Under the pieces are notes generated by a model that ran no database searches, was not told the origin of the DNA, and saw only the letters and a program-made list of their open reading frames with translations. A DNA stretch of 64,000 bases from assembly GCA_002269645.1 (NCBI GenBank), contig NIVC01003893.1, positions 1 to 64,000 of the forward strand, given 5' to 3'. This DNA is from Macrostomum lignano. Its lineage: Eukaryota. Numbering within the stretch: position 1 is the stretch's first letter; each line of letters starts with the position of its first letter. Made by a program: the position numbers and the translations under genes. Shown one piece after another: positions 1 to 38,418 of the stretch.

Positions 1-131
1 GGCGGAGGAGGCGGAGGAGTACAGAACGAGGCCCAGCCAGTCCCAAACCAACCAGTTTTAGCCAAACTCAACCCTCTACACCGACGCCAAAAGCCTGAAC
101 GCGAAAAAAGCCGTACCGTTCTACTCTGTTG

Positions 132-145
132 GTTGCCCTAGCGAC
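132..145 (+). promoter_or_regulatory. RFX X-box-like motif GTTGCCCTAGCGAC upstream of the ciliary FAM166-like gene
   Basis: Near-palindromic GTTGCC-N2-AGCGAC resembles the RFX consensus GTNRCC-N0-3-RGYAAC. It lies ~245 bp upstream of ATG 391 of a ciliary gene family member. Confidence 0.55.
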
Positions 146-390
146 CGGAACCTTCGTCTTGGAAGCGCCTGTGTCCCCCCTTGCCCTCTAGCCGCCGCCT
201 GTTGAGATGAGGGGGGGGTTGTGTGTCGCATTTTAAACTCACCGAAATGCCGGGCTTTGCACCGGTTCAATTTGTTAGGATAAAACACAGAAGACCGTTG
301 AAAGTTAATTAACGGCATAGTTTTTTTCCGAAGAAGCGTTTGTTTTCTTCGTCAATAGCCAGCTGCCAGAGAAGCTTAAGCCAGTCCAGC

Positions 391-2315
391 ATGACCACGG
401 TGCAGTACGGTGCGGTCAACCATCGAGCAGCGCAGGGCCTTCGTCAATCTCCGCCCTGGCTCCCACATCCCAGGCTACGCTGGCTTCAATCCAGTTGAAG
501 TTCAACTCCGGCAAGACTACGGCGAGCAGACCGCCCGAGCTGTCCAAATCGTTTCCTCACAAGCGCATGGTCGACATCGGGGCCGCTCTGGACGCTCGCA
601 AAGGCGGCGCCTCCGCCGCCTGCCAGCAAGCCGGAGTAGCCGAAGCTCAGGGACTTCGGCTGCCCAAGTCGACTGGCGACACAAGTACATCGACGGCATG
701 CTGCCGCTACACTGGCTACGTGCCAACTCTGATCAATCGATTCGGGGCACCTATCGCAATCTGTGCGACGAGTCCGTGGACGAGTTCGTGCGCAACTACG
801 AGCACCGGGAGGACAAAGCGACCGATTTGAAGCGCGCCTCAACCGCTTTTCCTCAGCTGGCGTCGCTGCGAGGCGATCCGGCGGTCAGGACCACTGAACT
901 CTGGGCCGATAGGAAGCCCAGGGCCGATGGAAAACGGCAGAATCTGGAGCCGCCAATTCCAGGATACCAGGTGAAACTGACTACGGACACTGCTGTGATG
1001 CTTTGCGAGTAATGATTCGATTCCTGTTTACTCAGATTTATGTCTGTTGAGACATAATTATCTACGTAGATACACTTATCTCTCTACAGCGATTCGCATC
1101 TCTTCAGTGGAAATCCAAACGTTAAAAGAGGCATCTCGATCAGTATTCTTACAGACACCAATTAAAATCTTTACAGTGACACTCAGTCTTCACCAGAGAC
1201 AATCCCATCTTCACACCAGAGACAACCCAATCCTCACCAGAGACACCCAATCTCACCAGAGACACCTGATATTTACCAGAGACATCCAATCTTCACCAGA
1301 GACAACCCAATCTTCACACCAGAGACAACCCAATCCTACCAGAGACACCCAATCTTCACCAGAGACACCTGCTCTTTACCAGAGACATCCCAATCTTCAC
1401 CAGAGACAACCCAATCTTCACACCAGAGACAACCAATCCTCACCAGAGACACCCAATCTTCACCAGAGACACCTGCTCTTTACCAGAGACATCCCAATCT
1501 TCACCAGAGACAACCCAATCTTCACACAGAGACAACCAATCCTCACCAGAGACAACCCAATCTTCACCAGAGACACCTGATCTTTATCAGAGACATCCCA
1601 TCTTCACCAGACATCCCAATCTTCACCAGAGACACTTGATCTTCACCAGAGACGTCCCAATCTTCACCAGACATCCTAATCTTCACACAGACATCCTAAT
1701 CTTCACCAGAGACACTCAATCTTCACAGAAGCACACACAGTTTTTATAGAGACACCCAACTTTACCAGAGAAACTTCACCAAATCTTCCATAATCTACCC
1801 ACACGCAATCTTCACAGACGCATCAATCTTCATTAAGACACCAATTTCCAAAGGGATAACTAAGTGTTCACCAAAGACACCCCGGCCCTGTGTTTACAGA
1901 GTCGCCCCAATATGAAGGGACTTTTCAAATTTTTAGCACTATAAAAACATCTTATAGTTTTACTGTCGATGCCTAAACCTTACAGGGCTACGTTCCCCGA
2001 GTGTACACAACCCAAGCCGGCCTGGGCTGCCGCTATCACGAGATGACGCGCAACGGCTTGGAGATGTTCAATTCGGAGACCAAATCCGGTAGCGCCAGGG
2101 TTGCAACAGCCAGGCCGGCGTGCGGCCGCGAGCCGGTCGCCCTCGACGGCAACCGGTGTACCAGCAGGAGGGCATGAAGCCGGCCTACACTGGCTACGTG
2201 CCAAGGCGCAGGTTCAACTTCGTCACACCTACGGCGAAACTACGCGCACCTGCCAGTGTGTCAGCACTCCTATCCAACCTACGGAAACTACGTCAGGTCG
2301 TTGACAGCTAATTGA
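391..2315 (+). CDS. FAM166B: FAM166/CIMIP2-like ciliary microtubule inner protein; 2 exons (391-970, 1986-2315); multiply frameshifted as assembled (sequence error or pseudogene)
   Basis: Repeated (P)GY(T/A)G(Y/F)xP...F..G.TYG motifs: HIPGYAGFNP, YTGYVPTLINRFG, PIPGYQ|GYVPRVY, MKPAYTGYVPRRRFNF..HTYGETTR. Phase-0 intron CAG|GT (971) ... TACAG|G (1985) joins PGYQ to GYVP. The protein must be stitched across at least 6 frame switches in exon 1 and more in exon 2. Confidence 0.7.
1185..1730. repeat. Intronic minisatellite, ~20-bp unit (CCAATCTTCACCAGAGACA)
   Basis: Degenerate tandem array inside the FAM166-like intron; explains ORF 1047..1580. Confidence 0.9.
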
Positions 2316-2814
2316 CGCCGCTGCCGGATGACCTCAGTTGACGGGAAGAGAACAAGTTAAAGAACAAGTCTGAAAATGAAATTGGATTGCTTCGCTTTTT
2401 CGCCGTTTTCTCTTTCTAAATTTTGTTTTACTGCTCAACAATCTGATCTTCTCGTTTAATTTGCTTTCGTTCAAACTATTTTTTCCGGAAGCTGTATCGA
2501 TTGACTTTTTCTAGGAATCTTCTGCTTGGAATTTAAAACTGTTGAATTTGGGGTTTTCCAATTTTTTTTTCTTAATTCTGCTGCGAACAATAACTTTGAT
2601 GTGTTGCTTTGCTTCTTAGATTAGATTGTTGCGAAAATTAGAGAAACTTTCCTTACGCTCGCATAACAGACTGCCGGATTTTCTGCCTAGTTCTGGAGTC
2701 TACTGTAAACAAAATGAAAACGTAATAATATACATAATGTAGAGTGTAATTCTTTTGCTACTAAATAGACAAACTAATGTTGGGTTCTAGTTCATAATAT
2801 TGGAAGTCATTAGT

Positions 2815-3722
2815 GAGCAAGTTTTGAGCTCATGAGTGAGTTTACGGGTGAGTTCATGAGTGAGGTTATGTGTGAGTTCAAGGGTAGTTTGTGAGTGAGT
2901 TCATGAGTGAGTTCATGGGTAAGTTCATGGGTGAGTTCATGGGTGAGTTCATGAGTGAGTTCATGAGTGAGTTCATGGGTAAGTTCATGGGTGAGTTCAT
3001 GGTGAGTTCAAGGGTAGTTTGTGAGTGAGTTCATGAGTGAGTTCATGGGTAAGTTCATGGGAGTTCATGGGTGAGTTCATGAGTGAGTTCATGAGTGAGT
3101 TCATGGGTGAGTTCATGGGTAAGTTCATGGGTGAGTTCATGGTGAGTTCATGGGTGAGTTCATGAGTGAGTTCATGGGTGAGTTCATGAGTGAGTTCATG
3201 CGTGAGTTCATGGTGAGGTCAGGGGTAAGTTCATGGGTGAGTTCATGGGTGAGTTCATGAGTGAGTTCATGAGTGAGTTCATGGGTGAGTTCATGGGTAA
3301 GTTCATGGGTGAGTTCATGGGTGAGTTCATGAGTGAGTTCATGGGTGAGTTCATGAGTGAGTTCATGGGTGAGTTCATGAGTGAGTTCATGGGTGAGTTC
3401 ATGAGTGAGTTCATGAGTGAGTTCATGGGTAAGTTCATGGGTGAGTTCATGGGTGAGTTCATGAGTGAGTTCATGGGTGAGTTCATGAGTGAGTGCAGGG
3501 GTGAGTTCATGAGTGAGTTCATGGGTGAGTTCATGAGTGAGTTCATGAGTGAGTTCATGGGTGAGTTCATGGGTGAGTTCATGGGTGAGTTCATGGGTGA
3601 GTTCATGGGTGAGTTCATGAGTGAGTGCAGGGGTGAGTTCATGGGTGAGTTCATGGGTGAGTTCATGGGTGAGTTCATGGGTGAGTTCGAGTTCATGGGT
3701 GAGTTCATGGGTGAGTTCACGC
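2815..3722. repeat. 12-bp minisatellite (GAGTTCATG[G/A]GT)n
   Basis: Direct tandem array; source of the MNSP/MGEF artefact ORFs. Confidence 0.95.
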
Positions 3723-4401
3723 GAGTGCTTTGCTGAACTATTTAAAAGCGGCAGAAGCTATTGACCCGAAAGCTAAAAGTTTCAATGCCTCCACTAAAGC
3801 TTTCACGTAGAATTTACGGAGAATATTTGAATAGCGGATACTTTTAGTTACCGCTTATAAACTCAAAAATATACAGCAAAATCGATTTTTCATACGCTCT
3901 TGAAATTCACGTTCTCCTTGCTTGGCTTTAACTGTTGAATAGACCATTCACTCTACACTCTCTGTGCCTTCGCGGTTGACCTTCAGGTGTCCAAGACACG
4001 CGAAATACATGGTATGCTACCATGAGGAAAAGCATACGTGTCATTTCTTATATTTATTAAGGACATCAGTAGTATGATGCGGACATTTGAAATGAAATTC
4101 TACTGTGCTTATTGAAAATACCAACGAATAGATGCAAAATGTACTTCACTTCGATCTCTTTGTTAATTTGACGTGTTTCAATTCCTGGTAATATTTTGCA
4201 CTTCGTTTTCGTTTAGCACTACGGCATGGCTGTTTGAACTCCTCCTGCCCTTGAATTGTGCTGGGCATTGGAGGTGAATCCCGGAGATGCTTGGCCAGCG
4301 AATCCATTGCTGATCTGATCGACAGCGCGTGAAGCTGCGGCTGAAATCCGTACAAGGGTTGCCGTGTCAAGGATGCGATACATGTGATTTTATAATTTTG
4401 T

Positions 4402-4562
4402 GACGGTGGCGCCCAACTAGTGGTGACGGGTGGCGCCCAACTAGTGGTTACGCGTGGTGCCCAACTATTGCTGACGCGTGGCGCCAAAAAATGGTGACGG
4501 GTGGCGCCCAACAAGTGGCGACGGATGGCGCCCAACTAGTGGCGACGGATGGCACCAAACTG
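4402..4562. repeat. Short array of ~23-bp units (GGTGGCGCCCAACTAGTGGTGACG)
   Basis: About 7 degenerate copies immediately downstream of the cGLR stop codon. Confidence 0.8.
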
Positions 4563-4656
4563 TTACTGGGTTGAAAATCTTCTGCCTGGTGATTACCAAA
4601 TTTTGAGAAGCACAACCTTGACAATTAACCCCTCTCGAGTGTCTCCTATCTGAGAA

Positions 4657-6077
4657 TCAGTTTGAGCTCACCCTGGCTTCAATGAAGTTTACAACAGTTG
4701 AATTCAGCATGGACTCGGTGATCAAGTCTCGATTCCTGTGCACAGCCTGCACCAGCAGTTGATCATCCTGTCCAGGTCGGTAGTAATGCAGCAGCATCAG
4801 CAGCTCCTGAGGATCTGAATCGCCATCCGCAGCGCTGGCAAACAGATCCGCGGCATTCCAGCGGTTTGAATACTCCAGCTGAATAGCCTTCATCAATGCG
4901 TCGAAGTTCATGTAGTAGCAATCGTCGTAGTTAACCAGGCGAGATGGAAACGCTTCCCGGATGTGGTTTGGCAGGAAGTTGAACACCGGATTGACATCGG
5001 TTTGCTTGAAGCTGAAGCTGAACTTCCACGCGGAGTCAGTCCGCTTCATCTGCTTCCAGACGAACTGTTCAGCCTCTTCGACAGATGCCGGAGATACTTC
5101 TTCAGATTCTGCTTTCAAGTGGCCAGCAACTTTTCTGCTGACTGTGCTGGTCAACTGAGAAGCGTCCAAACGGTTGCCAACTTTGAGACTGGCCAGAGCC
5201 TTCAAGCACTCTCTGGTTGTCTTCGCGCTGTCAGGAATTCTATCGATGCTGCTCATTAACTGGGCGAGTTGAGTTCTCTTATCGAACTCAGCAAACAGTT
5301 GAACCAATGCCCTGTAAACTAGATCGTCAATTTGGTAGAACTTTATTTTACCAGCAGCAGGAATTTCCTGCTTTTTGGGCATCTGAACTTCGGGAAGAAA
5401 CAGAAATGGATGAAACTCGATACTGCCAAGCTCAGTTGGGATTAAACCGAGCTCGAACTCCTCTAGCAGACTCGGCAAGTTCTCGATCACTAAGCGGACT
5501 TCCCGAGCTATGGTAGACTTTTCGTCGTGACCTTTGTGCAAATAGATCGCCGCGTCCTGAAGGAAGAAGTGGCGCATGCACTCCATCGAACTTGCCGATG
5601 GTTCGTGGAGCTGTCTGACTAAAATCGATAGCGACTCCTCAACAAGGCTGATGAGGTTCTCCGGCCTCTGCCACTCTTCCTCGGGCGTCTTGTCCAGCAT
5701 GTAGAACAGCAGGTTCTTGGCGTGGTAGCTCTTTAATCCCTTGACGCGTCGTCCAATGACTTTTTTAATCAGATATTTCAAAACGACAAAGACCTGGCCC
5801 TGCAGACTCGTTAGGCTCTGCATCAGCCTGCGTTCCAACAGATTCGTACTGACCCGCATCCGGTCGCCCGTCAACTCGGGAGGAGCTGCCGCGACCACGT
5901 GGCACCAAGCCAACTGTACTTCGTCTCGGAGAGCTTGCAGCACGCTAGGTCGTATTTGCGACACGTGACTGGTCTGGAGCAGCCAGATGGGTGGATAGGA
6001 ACAGCAGGGATAAGCTTTGACGTGATCCACCGCAGGCTTCAGTATGGTTCCAGCCTCTGGCACGCTGGGACTTGACA
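4657..6077 (-). CDS. ANK-cGLR exon 4 (third catalytic Asp, Mab-21 C-lobe, helical tail)
   Basis: KPAVDHVKAYPCCSYPP, LERRLMQSL, KSYHAKNLLFYMLDK, MRHFFLQD. The phase-1 acceptor at 6078 is weak. An alternative at 6099 would need a 1-nt indel in an A-run. Confidence 0.85.
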
Positions 6078-9000
6078 CTGCAATTTGTACAGGTTTTTTC
6101 TGCATAGATTAAATTCGGTTTCTCATGCATATACATGTATATAGATATGGGGGCAGAGCAGATCAGCGGTAAACGCGTCCAACTCTTGCGTCACGACCCC
6201 TGGTTCGATTCCGTGGGCGGTCACATTAGTTTGGGGCTTGTGAACAAATAGTGATTGGCCTGGGAGGTCTTGCGATTCAAACTCGTGAGGGTCAACCACC
6301 AAGGCACAGAGAGTGTACATGACTAAAGATTAGAAATTCAGGGCCGCTGTACACCCTATGTGAGCTTGTGTATGAGTTCGTGCCTGCGTACAGTATTGGC
6401 GAGCTCGTATGTGCTCAGGAGTCATCGGAATGGGCAGAATCGCCTCATCCCTGGTTGATGTCGTTGAAGGCGTTACGCCAAGGTGCTTATAAACTTTCTA
6501 CGAACATTTCATTTATTTTATTTATACGACGCAGATACGAGTAGTAGAATGTAGAATATGCTTCTTGAAATTTTAAAGGTTAAGCGGAGTTTGGCTGCGG
6601 TTAGCTGAATGGGCTGCTTGCGCCTGTCTGAATCCGAGGTGCGATGGAAATACAATGAGGCAGTTTCATACAATTTTAACGAGTCAGGCATATTTTTTCT
6701 TCGATCTTTTCTGCTCTCACATGACTGCATCTTCACGGGGTGAATTAATTTGCCATAAAATATGATAAGATCCAAATGTAGCGACTTCTGCTCTCCTTCA
6801 GTACACCATGTACTCTTCGTTGTGTACTCTCTCGTGCAATTCAGTCTAGCCTTCTCTCTCTCACCCTTTCTTCACTCTGATTGGTCCTCACTTCGTCCCT
6901 CTTTAGCCTCTCGTTCCCACTCCAGCCCCTCCATTTCTTTTATTTGAGTTCTTCACCTTTCTCCTCCGAAGGAGGAGTTCCACTTGTTTCTAATAAAAAT
7001 AAACTGTTGTGGGCTTCGGCCTTCCTCACTGACTCTACACTGACCCCTTCTGTTGCTAAAGTATTCTCTCAGCCTCCATGCTAGCTTTATTAATTATTTT
7101 TTCGACACCAAGTGGAATGTATAACAACCTACCATGCACTTTATAATCGATGTGGCCATCCGAATACTGCACTGGGACACAGTCGGTCTTTGAGCACATT
7201 CCAATCGGTGTGCAGCCAATCAGATGAAACGGCGGCATCGCTTCGATGCACGTGAGGTCAATGTCCGAGCCGACCTCGATTCGTCCGTCCAGCCTTGACA
7301 AGCAGTTGCCCCAACCGTCTGCGTAGCTGCCAACGACAAAGTAGCCGGCCTGGTTCTTGCTTCTGATAATCTTTTGCAGTACCGCAGCGGCGCCGCTTTG
7401 CAGAACGGAGTTCTCCCGACTGAAGCCCGAGAGCAGAAGTGACTGATGCAGCCGGAGGCTGTGTTGGACTGTGCTTTCCAATCTGGAGAATTGTTTGAAA
7501 CTTGATTGCATAAATGTGTCTAAATTTGGCTTTGCTTCCTTTCTATTAAACAGGCCCTTCCTGTTCCGTGTAAATCGTATAAGTATTCGGAGGGCAGCAG
7601 ACACCCTGGCGCAACGCCTACGGTGATATCGTCCTGCAACAAGTGGCGAGGCAATTCTACCCAGTCCGCTGATTCCTGAGCACATACTGTACGCAGGCAC
7701 GCACTCATACACACGCTCACACAGGGTGTACAGCAGCCCTTTGAGTTTCTGATTGTCAGGCATGTACACCCTGACTTTCACATGTCAGGGTGTGAATCGC
7801 AGGACAACTCCATTGGTCAATTTTCGTGCACACAAGCCGTAAATAAATGTGGCCACACACGGGATCAAACCACGTGTCTGTGAGCGAGCGTCGGATCAAG
7901 GACAACTGTATATAGCTATATACAGTGGTCCTTGCGTCGGACGCGTTTACCGACTGCTGTTCCCCTCTTTTCCTGGTTCTGAGATTTCGGTAACTCACCG
8001 ATGAACTGGCGGCAGGATGCTTCTTTTCATTGCTATAAATCTTTTGAACTCTTCAACGAAAACTTCAGAACCAGTTAGGCCTGACAAGTCGTTTAGGTCG
8101 CTTGAGTGCAACAATTGCGACTCAGACAGGGAAGCGAGAACCTCAATCTGGCCCCTGTAGCACGCAAAAGCGAAGCACTTCAACTCGTCGAGGAGCATCC
8201 TGTTCCAATGTTGTCGCGTCCTACGGCGTGGATTTCTGCACGATCGAAGATAGTTCAGAACTCGAATGCACCCGTTTTGAGCAGCAAGCCACAGTGGTGA
8301 CATGCCCACAGGGTCCAGGACATCAACGTTAACTCCGGCATCCAGCAGATTGATTGCGGCTTCTTCCTGACGCATGTCGATAGCTAACACAAGCGAGCTG
8401 GTACCGGATGCGCTGACGCGGTTCAGATCCGATCCGGCTTCAATCAGGGCGCCAATCACGCCAATATTTCCGGACCGCACCGCTATGCCTAGTGGAGTCA
8501 GATGGCCTTCGCCGACTATGTTGAAATTCGCGCCGGCTTTGAGCAGCTGCAACGCCACCGCCAAGTGACCCTCGCGCGAGGCGATCCACAATGGGCTGCA
8601 ACCGAAGCAGTTGCAGTCGTCAGTTCGGGCTCCAGCCTTCAGAAGCAACTCGACTACGCGAGTGTGGCCACCCTCGGAGGCGAAATAGAGTGCCGAGCAG
8701 CCCTCGAACCCAGACTGATTCACATTCGCTCCAAACTTTAGCAGCTCACGAACACACTCAGCGTGACCTTCGAGTGAAGCGGATGTCAGTGGACTGTTGC
8801 CAATCGTGCTGAGCACGTCCACTTTAGCTCTGTACTTCAGCAGCAGACGCGTGACCTTCAGATGTCCATTAGACACTGCAGCGTGTAATGGCGAACTGCC
8901 CATGTTATCGCAGCGATCAACAGTGGCACCAGCCCTGAGTAGACGCAACACGGTGCTGACGTGTCCGTGATCTGCCGCCGTCCATAGAGGGGAAGCATCG

Positions 9001-9947
9001 GTGCAGTCTGCAAGTTCAATGTCCGCCCCAGCTCGAATGAGCTCGTCAACGACCTTGACGTGACCATTCTGGGCGGCGATCCACAGTGATGTGCTGCCGT
9101 CATTCATTGGAAGATTCAGCAGAGCGACGCTGCACATTTCCGTTGAAAGCAGAAGCCGGACAAAGGACGCGTAACCGTTCTGGGCCGCAATATACAGAGG
9201 CGTGTAGCCATCTTCAGCTTGCTGGCTGATGTCAGCGCCAGCATTGATTAGCAGCGTCGCCACCTTCACGTGACCGTACTGCGCGGCAATGTGCATCGGC
9301 GACCAGCCCCTGTTCTCCGGTAGGTCGCAGTCCGCACCAGCGGCCAGCAACGCGGCTACTGTTGCCGTTCGACGGTTCTGAACCGCCACGTAGAGCGGCG
9401 TGGCGCCGAACTCTTGGCGCGGATTCAGCAGAGCTCCGGCGGAGATCAGCCGCTTGACAACGCGGACGTGACCGCGCCAAGCGGCTGCGCACAGCGGCGT
9501 CCAGCCGTTGCGCTGTCGCTTGTTCAGTCGGGCACCAGTTCGAATCAGGCGGTCCACTTCTGATGGCGAGGTAAAATATGCTGCAGTCAATAAAAGCTTT
9601 TCACATTCAGTCTCTGCATTTTGCATCTTTTGCACTAGAGGCTTTAGCACCAGGGGCTTTAGCACCAGGGGCTTTAGCACCAGGGGCTTTAGAACCAGGG
9701 GCTTTAGCACCAGGAGCTTTATCACCAGGGGCTTTAGCACCAGGGGCTTTAGCACCAGGGGCTTTAGCACCAGGGGCTTTAGCACCAGGGGCGCCAGCAA
9801 TGAACCTAACCAAAACTGCCCCACAAGCAAGTGTCTCCAGCAACAAGCCGACTCACCCTGCAGGTCGCCTCTGTCAGCTGCCAGCCACAGAGCTGACCGG
9901 CCATCCGGCAGAACTTTTCGATCCGAGCTTCGATTTGTCTCATGCAT
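4657..9947 (-). CDS. Ankyrin-repeat / cGAS-like (Mab-21 family) nucleotidyltransferase fusion, 4 exons, ~1160 aa
   Basis: Exons 9947-9857, 9559-7999, 7542-7133, 6077-4657 total 3483 nt (1161 codons including stop), with compatible phases 1/2/1. Donors are GTGAGT, GTGAGT and GTAGGT. About 14 ankyrin repeats are followed by NTase motifs GSYADG, SDID and AVDHV, then Mab-21-type SYHAKNLLFYML and MRHFFL. Confidence 0.8.
6150..6490 (+). mobile_element. tRNA-derived SINE, family A (in ANK-cGLR intron 3)
   Basis: tRNA-like head GGGGCAGAGCAGATCAGCGGTAAACGCGTCC...GGTTCGATTCC (A/B boxes). The body GTGTACATG...CTGTACACCC.TGTGAGC recurs at 7570-7900 (-), 17720-17880 (+) and 43190-43345 (-). Confidence 0.7.
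7133..7542 (-). CDS. ANK-cGLR exon 3 (nucleotidyltransferase GS and DxD motifs)
   Basis: Acceptor CTGTTTAATAG|A (phase 2). YFVVGSYADGWGN...DGRIEVGSDIDLT. Donor CAT G|GTAGG. Confidence 0.8.
7570..7900 (-). mobile_element. tRNA-derived SINE, family A (in ANK-cGLR intron 2), inverted relative to the 6150-6490 copy
   Basis: Minus strand reads GGTTTGATCCCGTGTGTGGCCACATT...GTGTACATGCCTGACAATCAG...GCTGTACACCCTGTGTGAGC...GTGCCTGCGTACAGTAT.GTGCTCAGGA, collinear with the 6150-6490 copy. Confidence 0.75.
7999..9559 (-). CDS. ANK-cGLR exon 2 (ankyrin repeat array)
   Basis: Acceptor TTTTACCTCGCCATCAG|AA. Tandem G.(T/S)PL..AA..GH..VV..LL.AGA repeats. Ends CAT CG|GTGAGT. Confidence 0.9.
9637..9793. repeat. 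15-bp minisatellite (AGCACCAGGGGCTTT)n in ANK-cGLR intron 1
   Basis: About 10 copies; gives the spurious LVLKP run in ORF 7995..9983. Confidence 0.95.
9857..9947 (-). CDS. ANK-cGLR exon 1 (first half of ankyrin repeat 1)
   Basis: MHETNRSSDRKVLPDGRSALWLAADRGDLQ G|GTGAGT. Splicing to 9559 restores a gap-free ankyrin repeat, GRSALWLAADRGDLQEVDRLIRTGARLN. Further upstream exons cannot be excluded. Confidence 0.75.
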
Positions 9948-10374
9948 AAATAGCGTGTGGCATGAGCTCACTTTAGCATGCAAAATTACATGATTTGCAG
10001 TGCTTTTTACGAGCGTAAATTAAAAACACTGGCCCTAGCATATCATTACAAGTTAGAGAGCTAAAATTTTTCTTTCTTCAGAGCGTCAGCGTGTACACTT
10101 CAAATATGCACATTTAGAGCAGTGTACACGCCTAATGTTCAGCATGATTGCTTGCGTACTTTTCTTGTCAGTGAATAGTACGCAACTTCATGCCCTAACC
10201 ACCCTACTTATTTTAGTAGAGTAGAGTGGTGAGTTGGTAAGTAAGTGTACTCTTAAGAATCTGTTATTTGCGCTATTAAACAGCTATAGAAATAAAAAAA
10301 CAATTAGAAAACCTATAAGATGCGTGCCCACACGATTATAAGGTAAGGTAATAAATAGAATATGAGATTTGACG

Positions 10375-11320
10375 CGATGAGATTAGACAGACTGTAGATT
10401 AGACAGAATAAAAATAGAAAAGATGAGATTAGACAAGATATGATCAGACAGGATGATTTCAGACAGGATGACACTAGACAGGATGGGAATAGTCAGGATG
10501 AGAATAGACAGAATGAGACTAGACAGAATGAGACTAGACAGAATGAGACTAGACAGAATGAGAATAGACAGGATGAGACTAGACAGAATGAGACTAGACA
10601 GAATGAGAATAGACAGAATGAGAATAGACAGAATGAGAATAGACAGAATGAGATTAGACAGAATGAGAATAGACAGAATGAGACTAGACAGAATGAGACT
10701 AGACAGAATGAGAATAGACAGAATGAAATTAGACAGGATGAGACTAGACAGAATGAGACTAGACAGAATGAAATTAGACAGAATGAGAATAGACAGAATG
10801 AGACTAGACAGAATGAGACTAGACAGAATGAGACTAGACAGAATGAGACTAGACAGAATGAAATTAGACAGGATGAGACTAGACAGAATGAAATTAGACA
10901 GGATGAGACTAGACAGAATGAAATTAGACAGGATGAGACTAGACAGAATGAAATTAGACAGGATGAGACTAGACAGAATGAGAATAGACAGAATGAGACT
11001 AGACAGAATGAGAATAGACAGAATGAAATTAGACAGAATGAGAATAGACAGAATGAGACTAGACAGAATGAAATTAGACAGGATGAGACTAGACAGAATG
11101 AGACTAGACAGAATGAGAATAGACAGAATGAGACTAGACAGAATGAGAATAGACAGAATGAGACTAGACAGAATGAGAATAGACAGAATGAGACTAGACA
11201 GAATGAGACTAGACAGAATGAGACTAGACAGAATGAGACTAGACAGAATGAGAATAGACAGGATGAGACTAGACAGAATGAGAATAGACAGGATGAGACT
11301 AGACAGAATGAGATTAGATG
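10375..11320. repeat. 15-bp minisatellite (AGACTAGACAGAATG)n
   Basis: About 60 tandem copies; source of the ETRQN and MRLDR artefact ORFs. Confidence 0.95.
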
Positions 11321-11729
11321 GCAGTGAGTACTGTTTAGTTATGATGCGCTTAATTTAAAGGAACTGGCACAAAAGTAAAATGATACAAGTTGCAGTACAA
11401 CATAATCTATCTTCTATCGACAGAATCCTGAATTCAATAATGCACACACTTGCAGTGCTTGCCAAAAATATTCAACAGATTCATACCTCGAAGGCCATAG
11501 AAACAAGAACGATATGAAACTGGAATTCACACTTATGGCATACTTTCAACAGAATAGTTCAGTCTAACGAAAAAGTTCAGAGTAAAACTTACTGCCAATG
11601 TCATTTTACATGCATGAAAAATTGGACTGCACTGGATTTAACTGAACTGCAGGCCTCTTGGGGTGGCTTTCATTAAAAATTTAAATTCTTCATCCCCTAG
11701 GCAGGGCATGCAATTGAGCTGAGAAGGCT

Positions 11730-12212
<483 letters not shown>

Positions 12213-14183
12213 GATTCTACTCTATCTAGATATTCACAGAAAGGTGAAACATCCGGTCGTTGAGATGCGCGGGGGCACTCCAAGGACAGCCAGTTGCGAT
12301 CTCCAGCGCCTGGTAAAAAGCTGTAGGATTGGGATGTGTTTTTCTGGGGGTGGCGGACGCCAGGCCCCCGGTGGGATAAGTGATCACGTGAGCTGCATTT
12401 CCGTTGTCACGTGGTCCAGGCGAGCGGTTAGCGCAGGGAAGGGGAAGGGGGCGGGCCGGAGGAGGAGGAAGAGGAGGAGGAGGGGAGGAGGTGAGAATTG
12501 AGAAATCTGGTTTCTGGCCCGCATGGTGGGAGGGAGAGATTAAGAGAGGGAAGGAGGCCTGAAATTTGAAACGCCAGCCCCACCAACGCGATGCAAATAT
12601 GTCCCGATGAGATCAGTGAGCTCGTACATGCACGAGTCGCTCCCCTGGCAGTCAGGGAGGATTTCAAAGGTCTATATTCAGCTTATAGGACTAGCTATAG
12701 CGCAGAAATGCTTACCATCTATGGATAATTCGCACTCGACATTTTGTTAGAGAGAGGAGGCGTTCTGCTCTGGTGCAGTGGATTGTTCGGCATCATTGAA
12801 GATTGTACGAGTACAGAGTCTCTTCAGCATTGATTTACTTTTGTCAGTGCAATAGCAAAGAATCCCCATTCGCTGCAACAGCAGCCACTAGAGAGATGAC
12901 GCACGGCTTTTGAGTGCAGCTACGACCCAGACACGAGTGCACAAAGCGCATGATATTTTTATACTGAACAGCAATTTGTCAATGGAAAACTTCAGGAAAA
13001 TTGTCATTATTTCAGCCTATTTGAATTCGCGCGGCCATTATTTCAGGCTAGCGGGAGGAGTCAGCCTAACTGAAGGAAAAGGGTTGATTTGACCATAGAC
13101 TATAACAAATATTAACCGTTTAAGATTGTTATTGCTCTATCACTGTGCGTAAGATACAATGGAGGGTTGTCTGGAAGTGAGAATTCACGAGTGGCTATCG
13201 CCGCTCGTGTCTATGGCCATTACCATGTTTTCTCACTTCCAGCTAACTTAATTGGTCAATTTGTCCACCAGGATCCGAGTGAGGAGGAATGGGGGTGTGG
13301 GGGCGAAGCCCCCACTTACAACAACAGACTATTTTATTTTACGCTCATAGACTCGTTCTTTATTCTAAAATGATATCCCGGTAAATTGCTTTATTGTCAA
13401 TTTCAAACAATGACCGGTCATTACTTGAATGTCATTGCCTTAACGTAAATTACAATTGACAATTTAGAACTGATATCATTTTAGAAAGTGCTTTAACGTC
13501 TATGGTAAAAACCAAGTGGGTTGGTCACTTGTTGGCTATACCATTCGGCAATACCATAGCACTGTCATCCCGCCAATCTATTGACTCCTGAGAACGCGTC
13601 GAGCTAAGTGGATTTTCGCCATAGACAAAATCGATCAAGAAAAGTCCAATTTCACTAGTTGAGCATACTGCATACAAAAATTAAGCTTAATCTGTCTTGG
13701 TTGTAAACAATTTTAGTCGAATAAAAATCCCAATTGAAAATTGTCAATCACTATGATTGAAAGTGCAATAATTGATATCAGATTATTGTCAGACCATGTC
13801 AACTTCCCTTATATTACGTCCCTGTCATATACAGCAGCTTTACTAAGGGGCTTATTAAGACTCAAGCTCTTCCATATAAGGATACGTGGGCTGGTAAACC
13901 ACCCGCAGTCCCTATAGTAGACTCTCGGTCGGGGATTAACTCCAGCAACTTGACACGAATGTTTTGATTATCGTTAGCAGCAGCTTCTACAGGCGTAGCA
14001 TTCGCATGGGGTCCGCTTACGAACAGTTTGTTGACATTTACGGAGGTAGGAAACAGACGGGACTGTCTTTTTAGCTGGAGATAAAATGCAGCTGCTTGTG
14101 CGCTGCCAGCACTATGGAAATGCGAACTGCAGCCATGCAGAAACAGCACTAGCGCCCCTGCCTCCCACTGACTCCCACAGTGG

Positions 14184-14776
<593 letters not shown>

Positions 14777-14913
14777 GTCGAAGAAATAATAAGAGTAAAC
14801 ACACTACATTTAAATTAGATGTTCAATTGAATAAGATGAGGAGCCAGTAAGTGGGCACACGGCCCAAACCGATATATTTATATGACATTAACTTTAGGGG
14901 TGCAAGATAAGAC

Positions 14914-15653
14914 CAAGGACGACTTAAGTAGAAGGACGGGAAACCTCGTTTCTTAGAAAATTTTAGAAGGCAGGTTTTCCCGAAAAAATATACTACGGAG
15001 ATAGGAAGTTTTCATTTTTTCAGCACAAAAATTGTTATTGCTTTTGATAGGAGGCAGTTCCAGTGTTCATCTTTTGATATGTTGTGCCTTTTTCATTGCT
15101 CTATCGATATTCATAGAGCTTTTCGTTCAGAAAATTAGGATTCTATGTTAATTTCTTATTCTACGTACATTTCCGCATGTCTTGTGCCTAAATACCATTG
15201 TGTCATGCTGTACGCTCATTATTCCACGCTTAGGAATCATTATTTTAGGCTTCTAAAAATACATTCATGAGACAATGTGTTTGTGTATATGGTTTTGGAG
15301 GTAGACAATGATAAATTTTTCACGAGTGGCGAAGCTATAGATAAAACCAATGATTTGGAGCTGTGCAATGCATTATTATTATTTTTGGTTCAGGTAATGT
15401 ACGCAGAATAAAAAATTAACATAAAATCCAAATTTTCTGAACGAAAAGCTTTATTAATATCGATAAAGCAATAAGAAAGGCACAACATATCAAAAGATGA
15501 ACACTGGAACTGCCTCCTATCAAAAGCAATAACAATTTTTGTGCTGAAAAAATGAAAACTTCCTATCTCCGTAGTGTATTTTTTCGGGAAAACCTGCCTT
15601 CTAAAATTTTCCAAGAAACGAGGTTTCCCGTCCTTCTACTTAAGTCGTCCTTG
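14914..15653. mobile_element. Non-autonomous TIR DNA transposon (MITE-like, hAT- or P-type), 740 bp, 8-bp TSD GATAAGAC
   Basis: Ends CAAGGACGACTTAAGTAGAAGGACGGGAAACC ... GGTTTCCCGTCCTTCTACTTAAGTCGTCCTTG; imperfect TIRs extend ~260 bp. GATAAGAC is at 14906-14913 and 15654-15661. Confidence 0.9.
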
Positions 15654-15844
15654 GATAAGACAAGGGGGGTGGAGTGCGCGACTGAGGAAAGAGGCGAGAA
15701 CGGAGAGCCAATCAGAACGCAGCAAGGGAGAGAGAGATAAGAATAACAAGATTGAGCTAGACAGAGAGAGAGAGAGAGAAAACAGAGTAAACAGAGACAA
15801 GTGAAGGTGAACTAAGAAATGACTAGGAAAGTCGCGACACTATA

Positions 15845-15895
15845 CTATCTAATCTATCTTATCTATCTATCTATCTATCTACCTATCTATCTATC

Positions 15896-15946
<51 letters not shown>

Positions 15947-15947
15947 C

Positions 15948-15980
<33 letters not shown>

Positions 15981-15982
15981 GA
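15845..15982. repeat. (TATC)n microsatellite
   Basis: Tetranucleotide run. Confidence 0.95.
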
Positions 15983-16857
15983 TATATACTCCTGCCTATA
16001 ATATCCTACGCCAACTGTAATTACTTCCATAAATAAAAAATCAACTTTCCAGCGAAGCGTTTCCATATCCTCGCTAGAGAAAACAAAGAATAACTAAAAA
16101 AGCCTTTATTGCCACCATGCCACTCTGATCGACACAGGACCAGAAACAGCTAAAAATAGCCCAGCCACGGTGGAATTACGAGCGAGTAACTGAGCGACAA
16201 TAACAACAGCGAGGCAGCTGAGCCCAATTTTAGCGGATTCAAAAGCGCCTACTTCGGCTACCAATATTCAAAGGCATGCATGTGCTGCACTCGTCAAAGT
16301 TAGCTCCTACACAAATAGGCTTCTGGTGTCTATTCTTAGCTACAGGAGTTGCAGCGCACAAGAGACGCAGACAGACTGGCAGCGAAAATTTATTTTCCAC
16401 TTTCTTCTCCTCTACGCCGTTTTGCTCTTTTAGCAAGAGGCGGCGGCCACACCCCCCGGGGATCTCGATGAGAGAGAGGGGAGGAACGGGGGAAAGGAGA
16501 AAAGTGGAATTAAGCAAGGATTGGAAGGCTGGGAAGGAACGGATCCAGTAGAGTGCTGGAGCATAGCTGTAGAGCACACGCTTAAGAAGTTCTGAGTCTT
16601 CCTTTGCTTGATGAGGCTCGGTCGAGATGCGGCTATTTTTAGACACAGCCTCTCTGTGACCCGACTGAAATACGACTAAGCTACTGAGCTGGTTGAATCA
16701 GAAAGCTCAGAAAGGAAAGAACCGTTAGAAAATGCTCCTAATGAACTCGTCTCTGTGTGTACTTTTGTGCAATTTAGAAGCTTTGTAGTCCCCCGCTCTT
16801 GTAAAGTGAATTCTTTAGATTGACCCGTTGTTGAAGTACATGTACTGCAAGTTCAAT

Positions 16858-18595: not shown

Positions 18596-19164
18596 TCAAA
18601 GCTTAGACGAGCGCACCGAACTCGACGCAGCCACGTGCGGCGCCAGCTCCAGTTTGGCGACTGACCTTAGATGAACTTCGTCCGGTCCATCGGCCAGCCG
18701 CAGCACCCGAGACCAGGTGTACAGCACAGACAGAGGCAGGTCAAGCGACAGTCCGGCTCCGCCGTGAATTTGAATAGCCCTATCAATTATCTCCGTGGCA
18801 ACTCGCGGGGTCATTACTTTAATTAGCGCAATCTCTTTCATGGCCTTTTTATTGCCAACGGTGTCCATCAGGTGGGCAGTTTTCAGCACTAGAAGGCGGG
18901 CAGCCTCCAGCTGGGCCCGGCTCCAAGCGATGCTCTGCTGAACACTGCCTTGAGCAGCTAGCGGCTTGCCGAACGCTACCCGGGACACTGCTCTCTGGCA
19001 AGCCAGCTCGATTGCTCTCTCGCAATGGCCGATCAGCCGCATGCAGTGATGCACCCGGCCGGGACCAAGCCGGCCCTGGGCGATTTCGAATCCGCGACCT
19101 TCGCCTAGAAGAACATTCTCGGCTGGTACAATGACATTGTCGAAACGGACTTCCGCGTGGCCAG
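18596..19164 (-). CDS. ACAD10: ACAD10 exon 9 (ACAD C-domain, ends SKL)
   Basis: [10 protein letters not shown]...[15 protein letters not shown]...[19 protein letters not shown]...SSKL*. Confidence 0.95.
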
Positions 19165-22100
19165 CTGCAATGGGCACAAGAAAATTGGGGTGGAGTGAAG
19201 TATAATTGGGGTGGAGTGAAGAATAATTGGGGTGGAGTGAAGGATAATTGGGGTGGAGTGAAGGATAATTGGGGTGGAGTGAAGGATAATTGGGGTGGAG
19301 TGAAGGATAATTGGGGTGGAGTGAAGGATAATTGGGGTGGAGTGACGGATAATTGGGGTGGAGTGAAGGATAATTGGGGTGGAGTGAAGGATAATTGGGG
19401 TGGAGTGACGGATAATTGGGGTGAAGTGAAGGATAATTGGGGTGGAGTGAAGGATAATTGAAGTGGAGTGACGGGCGATTTGGGGTGGAGTGACGGGAGC
19501 ATGTAATTGATGGATAGAATGCAGGTAGAAGGGCGGATAGAATACAAGTAGAAGGTCGGATAGAATACAGGTAGAAGGGCGGATAGAATACAGGTAGAAG
19601 GGCGGATAGAATACAAGTAGAAGGGTGGATAGAATACAAGTAGAAAGGCGGATAGAATACAAGTAGAAGGGCGGATAGAATACAGGTAGAGGGCGGATAG
19701 AATACAAGTAGAGGGGCGGATAGAATACAGGTAGAGGGGCGAATAGGCTACAGGTAGAGGGGCGGATAGAATACAGGTAGAGGGCGGATAGAATACAAGT
19801 AGAGGGGTGGATAGAATACAGGTAGAAGGGCGGATAAAATACAGGTAGAGGGCGGATAGAATACAGGTAGAAGGGCGGATAGAATGCAGGTAGAGGGTGG
19901 ATAGAATGCAGGTAGAGGGTGGATAGAATGCAGGTAGAGGGTGGATAGAATGCAGGTAGAAGGGCGGATAGAATGCAGGTAGATGGTGGATAGAATGCAG
20001 GTAGAGGGTGGATAGAATGCAGGTAGAGGGTGGATAGAATACAGGTAGAAGGGCGGATAAAATACAGGTAGAGGGCGGATAGAATACAGGTAGAAGGGCG
20101 GATAGAATGCAGGTAGAGGGTGGATAGAATGCAGGTAGAAGGGCGGATGGAATGCAGGTAGATGGTGGATAGAATACATTACATTACTCATAGGACTAGG
20201 TGGAACTGTGCACAGCGGGTACGGCAGCACTCAACACAATTATATTCAGGCTGCGATAAAACATATAAAACCTAGCAGATTGAAGCCGGAAATACAAAGG
20301 TAGGGGTGCAGCCTACCGACGCCACCCTGAACCGCCCTACCGAGATAAGACACCGCGTGACCAGTTATTTGTACAAGCATTACTATTATTAATACACAAG
20401 TACTAACCAGTCTATAACACAGGTCAGTTAAGGGCTAAGCGGAAGTGGCACGCTAGATAACAGAAATTTTATTTGAATAAAACATCTCCCCTCGTGTCCA
20501 GAATTATAGAACTCAAAAAGACTGAAAGACGGGGAGAGGGAGACTGTAAGAGTAGGAGGATTAAGAAAGCTGGTGCCCCCCGTTAGGCCCGACCTTGCGA
20601 GAGAGAAAGAGAGGAAGGAGAAAGACAAGAACGTCATTCCCAAATCCGAGGAGTAGTTTCTGACTGGTCTGGACAAGGTTCCCACCCCCAAGTCGATTCA
20701 AAGGCCGAAAAAGGATAGGATCATTTGCATCTCTTATGCAGGAGTTGGGGTTGACGCTGTTGTGCACTGCCAGGGGGCAAGAGAGGGAGAGAGAGAGAGT
20801 TAACGCTGCGTGTACACTCGCCGTAAACGTACAATAGGCCCGCTACGTCAGTGAAAGATTTTTATTGATCTATCTCTCTCCTTCTCTTTCTTACTGCACT
20901 TCCCTGCACTACTGACAAGCCAGCACTGCCCCGCCGACTGTTCAGATTAGAACCTACACAACCCACCATTTGCTCTCTCCCCCTCTCTCTCTGCCCTCTC
21001 CCCTGTCTGCAGCTCGCTTTTCTATTCGCTTAGCGGCAGCGACAGCAGCAGTCTCTACTGTCGCACTCGTGGGCGCCTGCGTTCTTCTCTCCGTTTCCTT
21101 CTATCCTTTTTTTTCTCTCCTGTCGTCTCTTTTATCGGCTTGATGTACCATTTGCCTCCTTCCCCCCTCCTCTCCTCTCCCCCCTCTCTCTACACTTTTC
21201 TGAAAGCGACGGCCGAACACTGACTATGTAGTATACCAAAGGGCGTGTGCACATGGACGAGTTAATTTGCATATATATATACGCATCTTTTCCACCGATT
21301 CGTCTCACAATCTATCGGTAAAATACTTTCTATAGAAAATCTCTACACACATAGAGATAGAACAGCCTTGAACCAATTAGTTCTAGACGCAAACTGCGTC
21401 CAGCTTCGGTTGCTAAGGGATACATCAGTCAGAACTAGTGCGGTGCAGAATGTCGCAAACAGGCTGCTTAGTTCGATCTAAACGAGCTTCAACTAAGAGC
21501 AATAATTCCACGGCATCGACTGTCAGCAGCGGTACAGGCGCTGCCGGCGGCGCTGCCTGCCTGTTTGGCGCCTGTTTTGGCGCCGGCGCCGGGGCAGGTA
21601 GCGGCGCGGCAGGTCGAGCGAATCCAGTAAACGCCGACGCGATTGAGAAGCTAACAGAGAGACTGGCTTATCACATCCAGCTGGGCAATACTCGGTCGGT
21701 GGAGCGGATACTCCGCAAACTGCGAGCGGTGCCTCCATCCAAGGTGGTTGTCTCGGTCAAGAGGCGACACCTCAGCCCGAATTTCCTAGCCTGGACCAAC
21801 AGAAGCCAGGATCCATTTCTACACTTTCACCAAGAGTGCTCGCCAGTGGTCTGGGCAGTGGACAATCAGCAGTGGCAGATGCTGCCAATTCTAGCCAAAT
21901 ACGGTCACGATCCTAACAGGCCTTTGCAGTGCAAACGGTGGAACTTCTCGCCGGCGTCCAGCAATCGCTCAGCGATGGTGCCCTACAAGAAGTTCTGGAC
22001 AAAGGGCCGCTACACCTACCAGTCAGCTTTGGACTACTACTTCGGATCGATCTACGAATTTCTGGGCGAGGAGATGCAAAGAATGAGCTCGTCGGCTGTA

Positions 22101-38192: not shown

Positions 38193-38233
<41 letters not shown>

Positions 38234-38352
38234 CAGACAGACAGGCAGACAGAGAGACAGACAGGCAGACAGGCAGACAGGCAGACAGACAGACAGACAG
38301 ACAGACACAGACAGACAGACAGAGAGACAGACAGGCAGACAGACAGACAGAC

Positions 38353-38385
<33 letters not shown>

Positions 38386-38418
38386 CAGACAGACAGACAG
38401 AGAGACAGACAGGCAGGC

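What the first reader, a model, noticed from the sequence alone, without database searches (positions are those of the whole stretch)
4657..9947. Hidden ankyrin-array / cGAS-like receptor (cGLR) fusion, with catalytic triad intact
Seen: three separate ORF-track entries (ankyrin 7995..9983, NTase 7056..7781, Mab-21 4657..6105) splice into one 1160-aa frame. The ankyrin ORF ends exactly at a GTGAGT donor whose phase matches an acceptor at 7543. A small upstream exon completes a gap-free ankyrin repeat. GS, DxD (SDID) and the third Asp (AVDHV) are all present. Known: cGAS, Mab-21 and cGLR enzymes use this triad to make cyclic-dinucleotide second messengers, and animal cGLRs with appended domains have been reported. 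Inference: this is an active immune or signalling cyclase whose ~14-repeat ankyrin scaffold could sense a protein ligand or autoinhibit the enzyme, rather than binding nucleic acid directly. A C-terminal extension of over 250 aa beyond the Mab-21 core is unexplained.
Basis: partly seen in the sequence, partly recalled or inferred. Interest (0 to 1): 0.85.

Follow-up and report, generated by a model that had tools for sequence, protein, structure and literature searches.

The report
Flatworm ankyrin-fused cGAS-like receptor gene
This is a real five-exon gene of the flatworm Macrostomum lignano that joins 14 ankyrin repeats to a cGAS-like (cGLR) nucleotidyltransferase, but GenBank already annotates it and a 2023 cGLR survey already catalogued its gene family, ankyrin fusions included.

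Summary
The three ORFs do splice into one ankyrin–cGLR protein. The window is the first 64 kb of M. lignano contig NIVC01003893.1. The gene is already annotated there as BOX15_Mlig017752g1 (PAA46131.1/PAA49379.1), and that annotation was built from RNA-seq transcripts.

- The ankyrin-to-NTase acceptor is at 7483/7482, not 7543/7542.
- The stop at 4657 is spliced out. The donor at 4672/4671 joins a fifth exon (4340–4146).

The protein is 1200 aa, not 1160.

GS, D-I-D and the third Asp are present and conserved across paralogues. The third Asp aligns with the third catalytic Asp of cGAS. The predicted fold matches oyster Cv-cGLR1 and cGAS best.

About 80 diverged paralogue clusters exist; all eight named ones I sampled are M. 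lignano. 48 of 81 carry an N-terminal ankyrin array. Li et al. 2023 already list M. lignano ankyrin-fused cGLRs and expressed five paralogues that are 30–42% identical to this one.

Activity, product, ligand and receptor are untested. A conserved C-terminal helical domain of about 260 aa matches no known fold.

Verdict: an ordinary new member of a known kind, low-to-moderate interest.

The parts
9857..9947 (-). Exon 1, coding part from the first in-frame ATG at 9947. It encodes residues 1-30 and the first base of codon 31, i.e. the first half of ankyrin repeat 1. The annotated partial CDS starts at 10001.
   Evidence: An in-frame stop lies just upstream of 10001. The complete models P0153 and P0156 start at this Met.
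9560..9856 (-). Intron 1 (GT..AG). It holds a 15-bp minisatellite at 9597-9829.
7999..9559 (-). Exon 2. It encodes the rest of the 14-repeat ankyrin array (protein residues about 17-482, window 9899-8205 including intron 1) and a linker of about 70 aa ending ..ILPPVHR.
   Evidence: Pfam Ank E 7e-84 with 13 stretches; junctions
7483..7998 (-). Intron 2 (GTGAGT..CAG).
7133..7482 (-). Exon 3, the N-lobe of the nucleotidyltransferase core. It carries G602-S603 (7331-7326) and D624-I-D626 (7265-7257).
   Evidence: (S, D and D are invariant in 10 paralogues)
6078..7132 (-). Intron 3 (GTAGGT..CAG). It contains the other arm (6340-6457) of the inverted repeat.
4672..6077 (-). Exon 4. It carries the third catalytic Asp D685 (6027-6025), the Mab-21_C helical lobe (residues 762-861, window 5796-5497) and most of the C-terminal helical domain (from residue 906, window 5364 downward).
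   Evidence: Pfam PF20266 29.5 bits against a cut-off of 24.1; hhalign to cGAS; Foldseek; C-terminal domain model
4341..4671 (-). Intron 4 (GTGAGC..CAG). It removes the ORF's stop at 4657-4659 and holds a 24-bp minisatellite at 4381-4568.
4146..4340 (-). Exon 5, encoding residues 1137-1200 plus the stop TGA at 4148-4146. It covers the end of the C-terminal helical domain and a basic tail (..CRSAKRKRSAKYYQELKHVKLTKRSK; pI 10.4 for the 64 residues this exon encodes).

Best explanation
**Shown**
- Window 4146-10001 (minus strand) is one five-exon gene of Macrostomum lignano, BOX15_Mlig017752g1.
- It encodes a 1200-aa protein made of four parts: a 14-repeat ankyrin array; a linker; a cGAS-like receptor (cGLR) nucleotidyltransferase core with both NTase and Mab-21_C lobes; and a family-specific helical domain of about 260 aa ending in a basic tail.
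- It belongs to a large, diversified expansion (about 80 clusters at 50% identity). All eight named representatives I sampled are from M. lignano. Most clusters share the ankyrin-plus-cGLR layout.

**Inferred**
- The core is a ligand-gated enzyme. It uses G602-S603, D624, D626 and D685 to bind metal and NTPs and to make a nucleotide second messenger.
- The ankyrin array is the ligand-sensing or autoinhibitory module. It recognises a protein or other non-nucleic-acid cue, which fits the near-neutral pI of the core.
- The diversified paralogues together act as an innate-immune receptor repertoire.
- The product, the ligand and the downstream receptor are unknown.
For: **One gene, one transcript**
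- The five-exon set reproduces PAA46131.1 exactly, and every junction is GT-AG.
- Window 1-16001 is identical to NIVC01003893.1, and the annotated gene span equals 4146-10001.
- The GenBank annotation of this assembly comes from a genome-guided RNA-seq transcriptome (PMC5730564).
- Five database models from two annotation sets use the same junctions.
- In the diverged copy g2 (NIVC01000434.1) all splice sites are kept. Exons show 29 mismatches and no gaps in 3603 nt. Introns show 44 mismatches and 139 gap columns in 2273 columns.

**cGLR identity**
- Pfam Mab-21_C scores above its cut-off.
- A PDB profile search finds cGAS and the coral cGLR 8gjy ('cGAS-like receptor 1') as the only hits below E 0.1.
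- hhalign to a cGAS/cGLR alignment gives probability 96.7%, E 4.5e-10. It places D685 on the Asp of cGAS 'ISVDITLAL', which from my own knowledge is D319, the third catalytic Asp of human cGAS.
- The AlphaFold2 model (pLDDT 74.9) matches Cv-cGLR1 8gjw best, then cGAS, MAB21L1, MB21D2 and Sp-cGLR1. About 355-400 columns align, at TM 0.5-0.57 normalised to the target.
- The cGLR domain is 30-42% identical (E 1e-46 to 1e-79) to the five M. lignano cGLR constructs in Li et al. Table S3.

**Catalytic residues**
- S, D, D and D are invariant in 10 paralogues.
- The relaxed cGLR motif is present in 66 of 81 family representatives.

**Architecture**
- 48 of 81 representatives have an N-terminal ankyrin array and 43 of 81 have the C-terminal domain.
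- Li et al. Table S2 lists M. lignano cGLRs with Ank_2 domains.

**Charge**
- Core pI is 6.4, against 9.0 for the cGAS catalytic domain.
Against: - No activity data exist for this protein.
- The five M. lignano paralogues expressed by Li et al. (cGLR domain only) carry no 'active' note in Table S3. The authors say many cGLRs appear inactive in vitro.
- The strict h[QT]GS motif is not met: this protein has V-G-S, and only 6 of 81 relatives meet it.
- The GS-to-DxD spacer is 20 residues, the upper limit of the published motif. In the model this loop has pLDDT below 50.
- The N-lobe could not be aligned to cGAS by profile methods.
- STING was not searched for in M. lignano. The planarian Schmidtea has neither cGAS nor STING (PMC13563047), and cestodes score 0/0 in Li et al. 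Table S5.
- The role of the ankyrin array rests on architecture alone.
Confidence: 0.6

Rival explanations
1. It is a nucleotidyltransferase with different chemistry. It might make linear 2'-5' or 3'-5' oligonucleotides as OAS does, or it might nucleotidylate a protein or RNA held by the ankyrin array, rather than make a cyclic dinucleotide for STING.
For: - The G-S..S-D-I-D-L pattern and the long spacer resemble OAS and terminal-transferase motifs more than the E-F-D of cGAS. This is my own knowledge of those families; it was not tested here.
- Other flatworms surveyed lack STING.
- Some products in Li et al.'s screen were 'unknown'.
Against: - The best sequence and fold matches are cGLR and cGAS rather than OAS or poly(A) polymerases.
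- The Mab-21_C lobe and the WRLSFS-like MRVSTNLLER motif align to cGAS.
Confidence: 0.15
2. It is a non-catalytic Mab-21-like scaffold (a pseudoenzyme), like MAB21L1. The ankyrin array and the C-terminal domain would then mediate protein interactions without any nucleotide signalling.
For: - MAB21L1 and MB21D2 are among the fold matches.
- The strict h[QT]GS motif is not met.
- The tested M. lignano paralogues are not flagged as active.
Against: - The GS serine and all three acidic residues are invariant across paralogues that are only 23-43% identical. They are kept in most of 81 diverged representatives, which is hard to explain without catalysis.
- Li et al. state that Mab21L1/2/3 lack a predicted functional active site. 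This family has one.
Confidence: 0.15
3. These are two separate genes (an ankyrin gene and a cGLR gene) joined artefactually by transcript assembly or read-through.
For: - M. lignano has polycistronic precursors that are resolved by trans-splicing; about 7% of assembled transcripts are such precursors.
Against: - One continuous reading frame runs across a canonical GTGAGT..CAG intron.
- Five models use the same junction.
- The same N-terminal ankyrin plus cGLR order occurs in 48 of 81 diverged paralogue clusters and in Li et al. Table S2.
- The splice sites are conserved in copy g2.
Confidence: 0.03

Closest known systems
Macrostomum lignano cGLRs catalogued by Li et al. 2023 (bioRxiv 10.1101/2023.02.22.529553 / PMC9980059): PAA86972.1, PAA45980.1, PAA57558.1, PAA93208.1, PAA68676.1 in Table S3; PAA67649.1, PAA58690.1, PAA68676.1, PAA86972.1 with Ank_2 in Table S2
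   Same: - Same species.
- Same GS[FY]x[DE]GW[GA]...SD[IV]D signature.
- 30-42% identity over the cGLR domain.
- Same layout, with the ankyrin array N-terminal to the cGLR domain.
   Different: - This is a different paralogue.
- Its accessions were not found in the stored parts of the supplementary tables, which are truncated.
- Li et al. expressed the cGLR domain without the ankyrin array.
Oyster Cv-cGLR1 (PDB 8gjw), coral Sp-cGLR1 (8gjy), and the ankyrin- or death-domain-fused cGLRs of Stylophora pistillata
   Same: - Best structural matches for the two-lobed caged NTase fold.
- Appended protein-interaction domains have been reported in corals.
   Different: - Only 12-15% sequence identity.
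- Those enzymes sense dsRNA or dsDNA and have basic surfaces, whereas this core has pI 6.4.
- They lack the C-terminal domain of about 260 aa.
Vertebrate cGAS
   Same: - Same fold.
- The third catalytic Asp, the WRLSFS..E motif and the SYHxK helix all align.
   Different: - cGAS has no ankyrin array.
- It has E-F-D rather than S-D-I-D, TGS rather than VGS, and a shorter activation loop.
- It has a DNA-binding basic surface and a zinc thumb, neither of which is evident here.
MAB21L1 / MB21D2 (orphan Mab-21 proteins)
   Same: Same fold family (PDB 5eom and 7lt1 among the hits).
   Different: Li et al. state that Mab21L1/2/3 lack a functional active site. This protein keeps all the catalytic residues.
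OAS–RNase L (analogy only, from my own knowledge)
   Same: An NTase of the same superfamily signals through a nucleotide that is read by an ankyrin-repeat domain, that of RNase L.
   Different: There the ankyrin array sits on the receptor, not on the synthase. No homology between the two ankyrin arrays was tested.

Membership tests
cGLR (criteria of Li et al. 2023) | Relaxed active-site motif: G[S/G] activation loop, then [DE]h[DE]h, X50-90, h[DE] | tested here: met
   - G602-S603, a 20-residue spacer, D624-I-D626-L, 56 residues, then V-D685.
- The residues are invariant in 10 paralogues.
cGLR (criteria of Li et al. 2023) | Strict motif h[QT]GS (Gln or Thr before GS) | tested here: not met
   - The sequence is V-V-G-S.
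- Only 6 of 81 family representatives meet the strict form.
- Li et al. nevertheless include paralogues such as PAA86972.1 (V-M-G-S) in their catalogue.
cGLR (criteria of Li et al. 2023) | [quoted passage not shown] | tested here: met
   - blastp to the catalogued M. lignano cGLR constructs covers both lobes (query 559-968, E down to 3e-79).
- Against cGAS itself only the region from the third Asp onward aligns (hhalign 96.7%). The N-lobe does not align.
cGLR (criteria of Li et al. 2023) | Predicted structural homology to known cGLR or CD-NTase enzymes | tested here: met
   - AlphaFold2 model with pLDDT 74.9 and pTM 0.67.
- Foldseek top hits are 8gjw, cGAS and 8gjy, with probability 1.00, TM 0.5-0.57 per target and 355-400 aligned columns.
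- Caveat: the activation loop has low confidence, and no coordinates were available to measure the triad.
cGLR | Synthesis of a nucleotide second messenger, gated by a ligand | not testable with these tools
   - This needs recombinant enzyme assays.
- The paralogues in Li et al.'s screen are not flagged among the 15 active enzymes.
cGLR–STING pathway | A STING (or other CDN receptor) encoded in the same genome | not tested
   - No tool here searches the M. lignano proteome by profile.
- M. lignano is absent from Li et al. Table S5. Cestodes score 0/0 there, and Schmidtea has none.
Ankyrin-repeat proteins | Tandem 33-residue Ank repeats | tested here: met
   - PF00023 E 7.3e-84 with 13 stretches; PF12796 E 1.2e-82.
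- Reading the sequence gives 14 repeats.
Mab-21 family (Pfam) | Mab-21_C HhH/H2TH-like domain (PF20266) and Mab-21 NTase domain (PF03281) | tested here: inconclusive
   - PF20266 is met (27.4-29.5 bits against a cut-off of 24.1).
- PF03281 gave no hit even at E up to 10.

The most novel reading that the evidence does not exclude
The expansion of about 80 ankyrin–cGLR clusters is a flatworm-specific pattern-recognition repertoire. In this reading:
- the variable ankyrin arrays, not the NTase surface, read pathogen proteins or small molecules;
- the fold-orphan C-terminal domain of about 260 aa couples the enzyme to a signalling route that does not use STING. Other flatworms surveyed have lost cGAS and STING altogether.
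Probability: 0.15. Interest if true: 0.7.

Novelty: new member of a known kind. Interest (0 to 1): 0.3.

Why it matters
For annotation, the result is simple.

Biologically, the single gene adds little. Ankyrin-fused cGLRs, and the M. lignano cGLR clade itself, are already in the literature.

What remains open is the whole family:
- why one free-living flatworm keeps dozens of ankyrin–cGLR fusions when planarians and cestodes have none;
- what activates them;
- what they make and what reads the signal;
- what the conserved C-terminal domain, which has no known fold, does.

M. lignano has established transgenesis (PMC5730564), so these questions could be tested directly.

Tried and rejected
- **Exact look-up of the 482-aa ORF (4657-6105):** nothing on record, because the real product is spliced.
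it missed the identical database protein. The profile search found it.
- **Aligning the N-lobe (GS/DxD) to cGAS with hhalign, global and local:** no meaningful alignment. Those two motifs therefore rest on pattern, conservation and the fold match.
- **Model coordinates:** not available to scripts, so carboxylate distances could not be measured.
- **C-terminal domain (residues 906-1163):**
  - no Pfam hit (best E 0.68);
  - no PDB sequence hit (best E 0.085);
  - no structural match to a confident model (pLDDT 78.6, pTM 0.76) in the PDB (best E 1.1) or in viral structures (best E 0.68).
- **Comparison with the second contig carrying the same protein (NIVC01005038.1):** it is an almost identical assembly copy that differs only in the intron-4 minisatellite, so it says nothing about selection.
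- **Literature:** the locus name gives no hits, and nothing on M. lignano cGAS/STING beyond Li et al..
- **STING search with the last homology search:** considered and not run. A single vertebrate query through a word index would probably miss a flatworm STING, so a negative result would mean nothing.
- **Continuation of the gene beyond exon 5:** rejected, because the annotated CDS ends at the TGA at 4148-4146. The 1613-aa UniProt model that runs on reads into the antisense strand of the neighbouring gene.
Full report
**1. The observation**

The N-terminal 551 aa give 13 Pfam Ank stretches (E 7e-84). The C-terminal 609 aa hit only Mab-21_C (PF20266, 27.4 bits against a cut-off of 24.1). tblastn with homologues shows their residues running contiguously from 7466-7134 into 6087-4672. 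The intron 7132-6078 therefore has independent support.

**2. Where the window comes from, and the true gene model**

A profile search recovered a 1218-aa NCBI protein that is 100% identical to the window gene: 'hypothetical protein BOX15_Mlig017752g1, partial [Macrostomum lignano]'. Its accessions are PAA46131.1 and PAA49379.1.

Window 1-16001 is base-for-base identical to NIVC01003893.1:1-16001 of assembly GCA_002269645.1. The annotated gene spans exactly 4146-10001.

The exon set that reproduces this protein exactly, all with GT-AG junctions, is:

| Exon | Window coordinates (minus strand) |
|---|---|
| 1 | 10001 (ATG at 9947) to 9857 |
| 2 | 9559 to 7999 |
| 3 | 7482 to 7133 |
| 4 | 6077 to 4672 |
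| 5 | 4340 to 4146 |

Two details were wrong:
- The acceptor after the ankyrin exon is 'ttctccag|A' at 7483/7482, not 7543/7542. This removes 20 residues.
- The stop at 4657 lies in an intron. AGG|GTGAGC at 4672/4671 splices to a fifth exon that adds 64 residues.

From the first Met the protein is 1200 aa. This is identical to UniProt A0A1I8FW00 and equal in length to the complete paralogue PAA83064.1. All five database models, from two annotation sets, use the same junctions.

The GenBank annotation of this assembly was made from a genome-guided RNA-seq transcriptome (StringTie/TACO/TBONE/TransDecoder; PMC5730564). The fusion therefore rests on assembled transcripts, not on ab initio prediction. 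I did not see the reads themselves.

A diverged copy (g2, NIVC01000434.1) gives further support:
- every splice site is kept;
- exons show 29 mismatches and no gaps in 3603 nt;
- introns show 44 mismatches and 139 gap columns in 2273 columns;
- 13 codons differ synonymously and 16 non-synonymously.

**3. What the protein is**

*Ankyrin array.* There are 14 repeats, at residues about 17-482.

*Core (residues 552 to about 891).*
- A PDB profile search finds cGAS and the coral cGLR 8gjy ('cGAS-like receptor 1') as the only hits below E 0.1, and the E-values are weak (1e-3 to 1e-2).
- hhalign against a small cGAS/cGLR alignment, built from sequences printed in Li et al. Table S3, gives probability 96.7% and E 4.5e-10.
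  - 'KPAVDHVKA' aligns with cGAS 'KISVDITLAL'. That Asp is, from my own knowledge, D319, the third catalytic Asp of human cGAS.
  - 'MRVSTNLLER' aligns with 'WRLSFSHIEK'.
  - 'KSYHAKNLLFYML' aligns with 'SSYHVKTAFFHV'.
- An AlphaFold2 model of the 649 C-terminal residues has pLDDT 74.9 and pTM 0.67.
- Its best PDB matches are Cv-cGLR1 (8gjw, E 3.4e-7), many cGAS entries, MAB21L1, MB21D2 and Sp-cGLR1. Each aligns over essentially the whole target (355-400 columns, TM 0.5-0.57 per target).
- Caveats:
  - The activation loop (model residues 59-72) has pLDDT below 50.
  - I could not obtain coordinates to measure the triad.
  - The N-lobe does not align to cGAS by profile methods.

*Catalytic residues.* G602-S603, D624-I-D626 and D685 are present. 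S, D, D and D are invariant in ten paralogues that are only 23-43% identical. The relaxed motif used by Li et al. for final selection is met here and in 66 of 81 family representatives. The strict h[QT]GS form is not met (V-G-S here; 6 of 81).

- It is conserved in 43 of 81 representatives.
- It models confidently as a mainly helical domain (pLDDT 78.6, pTM 0.76).
- It has no Pfam match, no PDB sequence match and no structural match in the PDB or in viral structures. It stays unexplained.
- The tail (..KRKRSAKYYQELKHVKLTKRSK; pI 10.4 for the 64 residues of exon 5) looks like a nuclear-localisation or polyanion-binding signal. That is inference only.

**4. The family**

An exhaustive profile search of 1.84 billion representatives found 1608 proteins at E up to 1e-3 and 76 at E up to 1e-30. 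I looked up ten hits by name:
- seven strong hits, down to E 7e-26, are all M. lignano;
- P0007 (E 9e-156) and P0093 (E 9e-20) come from unnamed ENA assemblies;
- one hit near E 1e-21 is from a bivalve, Sinanodonta.

Among the top 81 representatives, 48 have an ankyrin array N-terminal to the core. Clustering at 50% identity means this count is not inflated by the known redundancy of the assembly.

**5. Comparison with what is known**

Li et al. [quoted passage not shown]
- 87% of cGLRs are stand-alone, but some are fused to TPR or ankyrin modules. Coral examples carry ankyrin and death domains.
- Table S3 lists five M. lignano proteins cloned for the 140-enzyme screen. One of them, PAA57558.1, contains the sequence of my hit P0004.
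- Table S2 lists M. lignano accessions with Ank_2 domains.

The cGLR domain of this gene is 30-42% identical to those five constructs (E 1e-46 to 3e-79). The family and its ankyrin fusion are therefore already catalogued. I could not find this gene's own accessions, but the stored supplementary files are truncated.

None of the five M. lignano constructs carries the note that marks the 15 enzymes chosen as active. The authors say many cGLRs appear inactive in vitro, probably for want of the right ligand. The constructs also lacked the ankyrin arrays.

**6. Mechanism**

*Shown:* a single gene, its domain order, retention of the catalytic residues, a cGLR-like fold, and a large diversified paralogue family.

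*Inferred:*
- It is a ligand-gated synthase of a nucleotide second messenger.
- The ankyrin array acts as sensor or autoinhibitor.
- The ligand is probably not nucleic acid. The core pI is 6.4, against about 9 for the cGAS catalytic domain, and Li et al. link high pI to nucleic-acid sensing.

*Unknown:* the product, the ligand and the receptor. STING was not searched for in M. lignano. Schmidtea lacks both cGAS and STING (PMC13563047), and cestodes score 0/0 in Li et al. Table S5.

*Rivals:* other NTase chemistry, a pseudoenzyme scaffold, or two genes joined by artefact. The last is very unlikely.

**7. Verdict**

The gene is an annotated member of an already described class, so its interest is low to moderate. 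The interest lies in the family-level questions rather than in this locus.

Noticed in passing
window 6340-6457 and 7637-7740: Two copies of an interspersed repeat of about 120 nt lie in opposite orientation in introns 3 and 2 (arms of 57 nt at 93% and 51 nt at 82% complementarity). They bracket exon 3, which carries the GS and DxD motifs. Such pairs can promote exon skipping or back-splicing. Skipping this 350-nt exon would shift the frame.
   Followed up: partly
window 9597-9829; 4381-4568; also 2878-3736, 10440-11358, 11768-12283, 14086-14850, 19100-20230, 24200-24650, 33409-33807, 34845-35669, 37986-38709, 46950-47271, 47724-48936: The window is crowded with minisatellites, including a 15-bp unit in intron 1 and a 24-bp unit in intron 4 of the gene. 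They generate many long spurious ORFs on both strands.
   Followed up: partly
window about 18596-43646, minus strand: Exons of an ACAD10/ACAD11-like gene are spread over about 25 kb: HAD hydrolase at 38929-39546, APH phosphotransferase at 37553-38692, and acyl-CoA dehydrogenase C-terminal domain at 18596-19639. ORFs at 43167-43646 and 30856-31593, which look like HAD and ACAD N-terminal parts, gave no Pfam hit.
   Followed up: partly
window 24704-26539, minus strand: A 611-aa ORF with reverse-transcriptase and RNase H domains, i.e. a retrotransposon fragment, lies inside the ACAD10-like gene's span.
   Followed up: partly
window 21438-22940, plus strand: An intact 500-aa ORF with no Pfam match lies on the opposite strand within the ACAD10-like gene's span. 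Its C-terminus reads like a SOCS-box-type motif, but this was not tested.
   Followed up: no
window 410-2311, plus strand (L003 13825-15247): The downstream neighbour is a ciliary CMI2B/SPMIP5-like gene with IPGY[AT]GF motifs. The UniProt model A0A1I8GVG0 (1613 aa) runs past the real stop of the cGLR gene into the antisense strand of this neighbour, so it looks like a chimeric prediction.
   Followed up: partly
window 56447-57169 and 60071-60688, plus strand: ORFs with a CIA30-like domain (complex I assembly; E 1.3e-5, just above the Pfam cut-off) and an LSM12-like LSM domain (E 1.8e-6, 28 bits, just below the cut-off of 29.5). They are probably exons of housekeeping genes.
   Followed up: no
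L002 (NIVC01005038.1) and L004 (NIVC01000434.1): The same gene occurs on a second contig that differs only in the intron-4 minisatellite. A 98-99% identical copy (g2; 16 amino-acid differences) has the same CMI2B-like neighbour. This fits the duplicated, redundant Mlig_3_7 assembly.
   Followed up: yes
L001 (ENA ERZ24986310, ctg32947l): A distant relative (P0007, 886 aa) has GS..SDCD and the third Asp, no ankyrin repeats, and an unrelated N-terminal region of about 290 aa. It sits as an uninterrupted ORF on a 19.6-kb contig of an unidentified ENA assembly. The organism was not determined.
   Followed up: no
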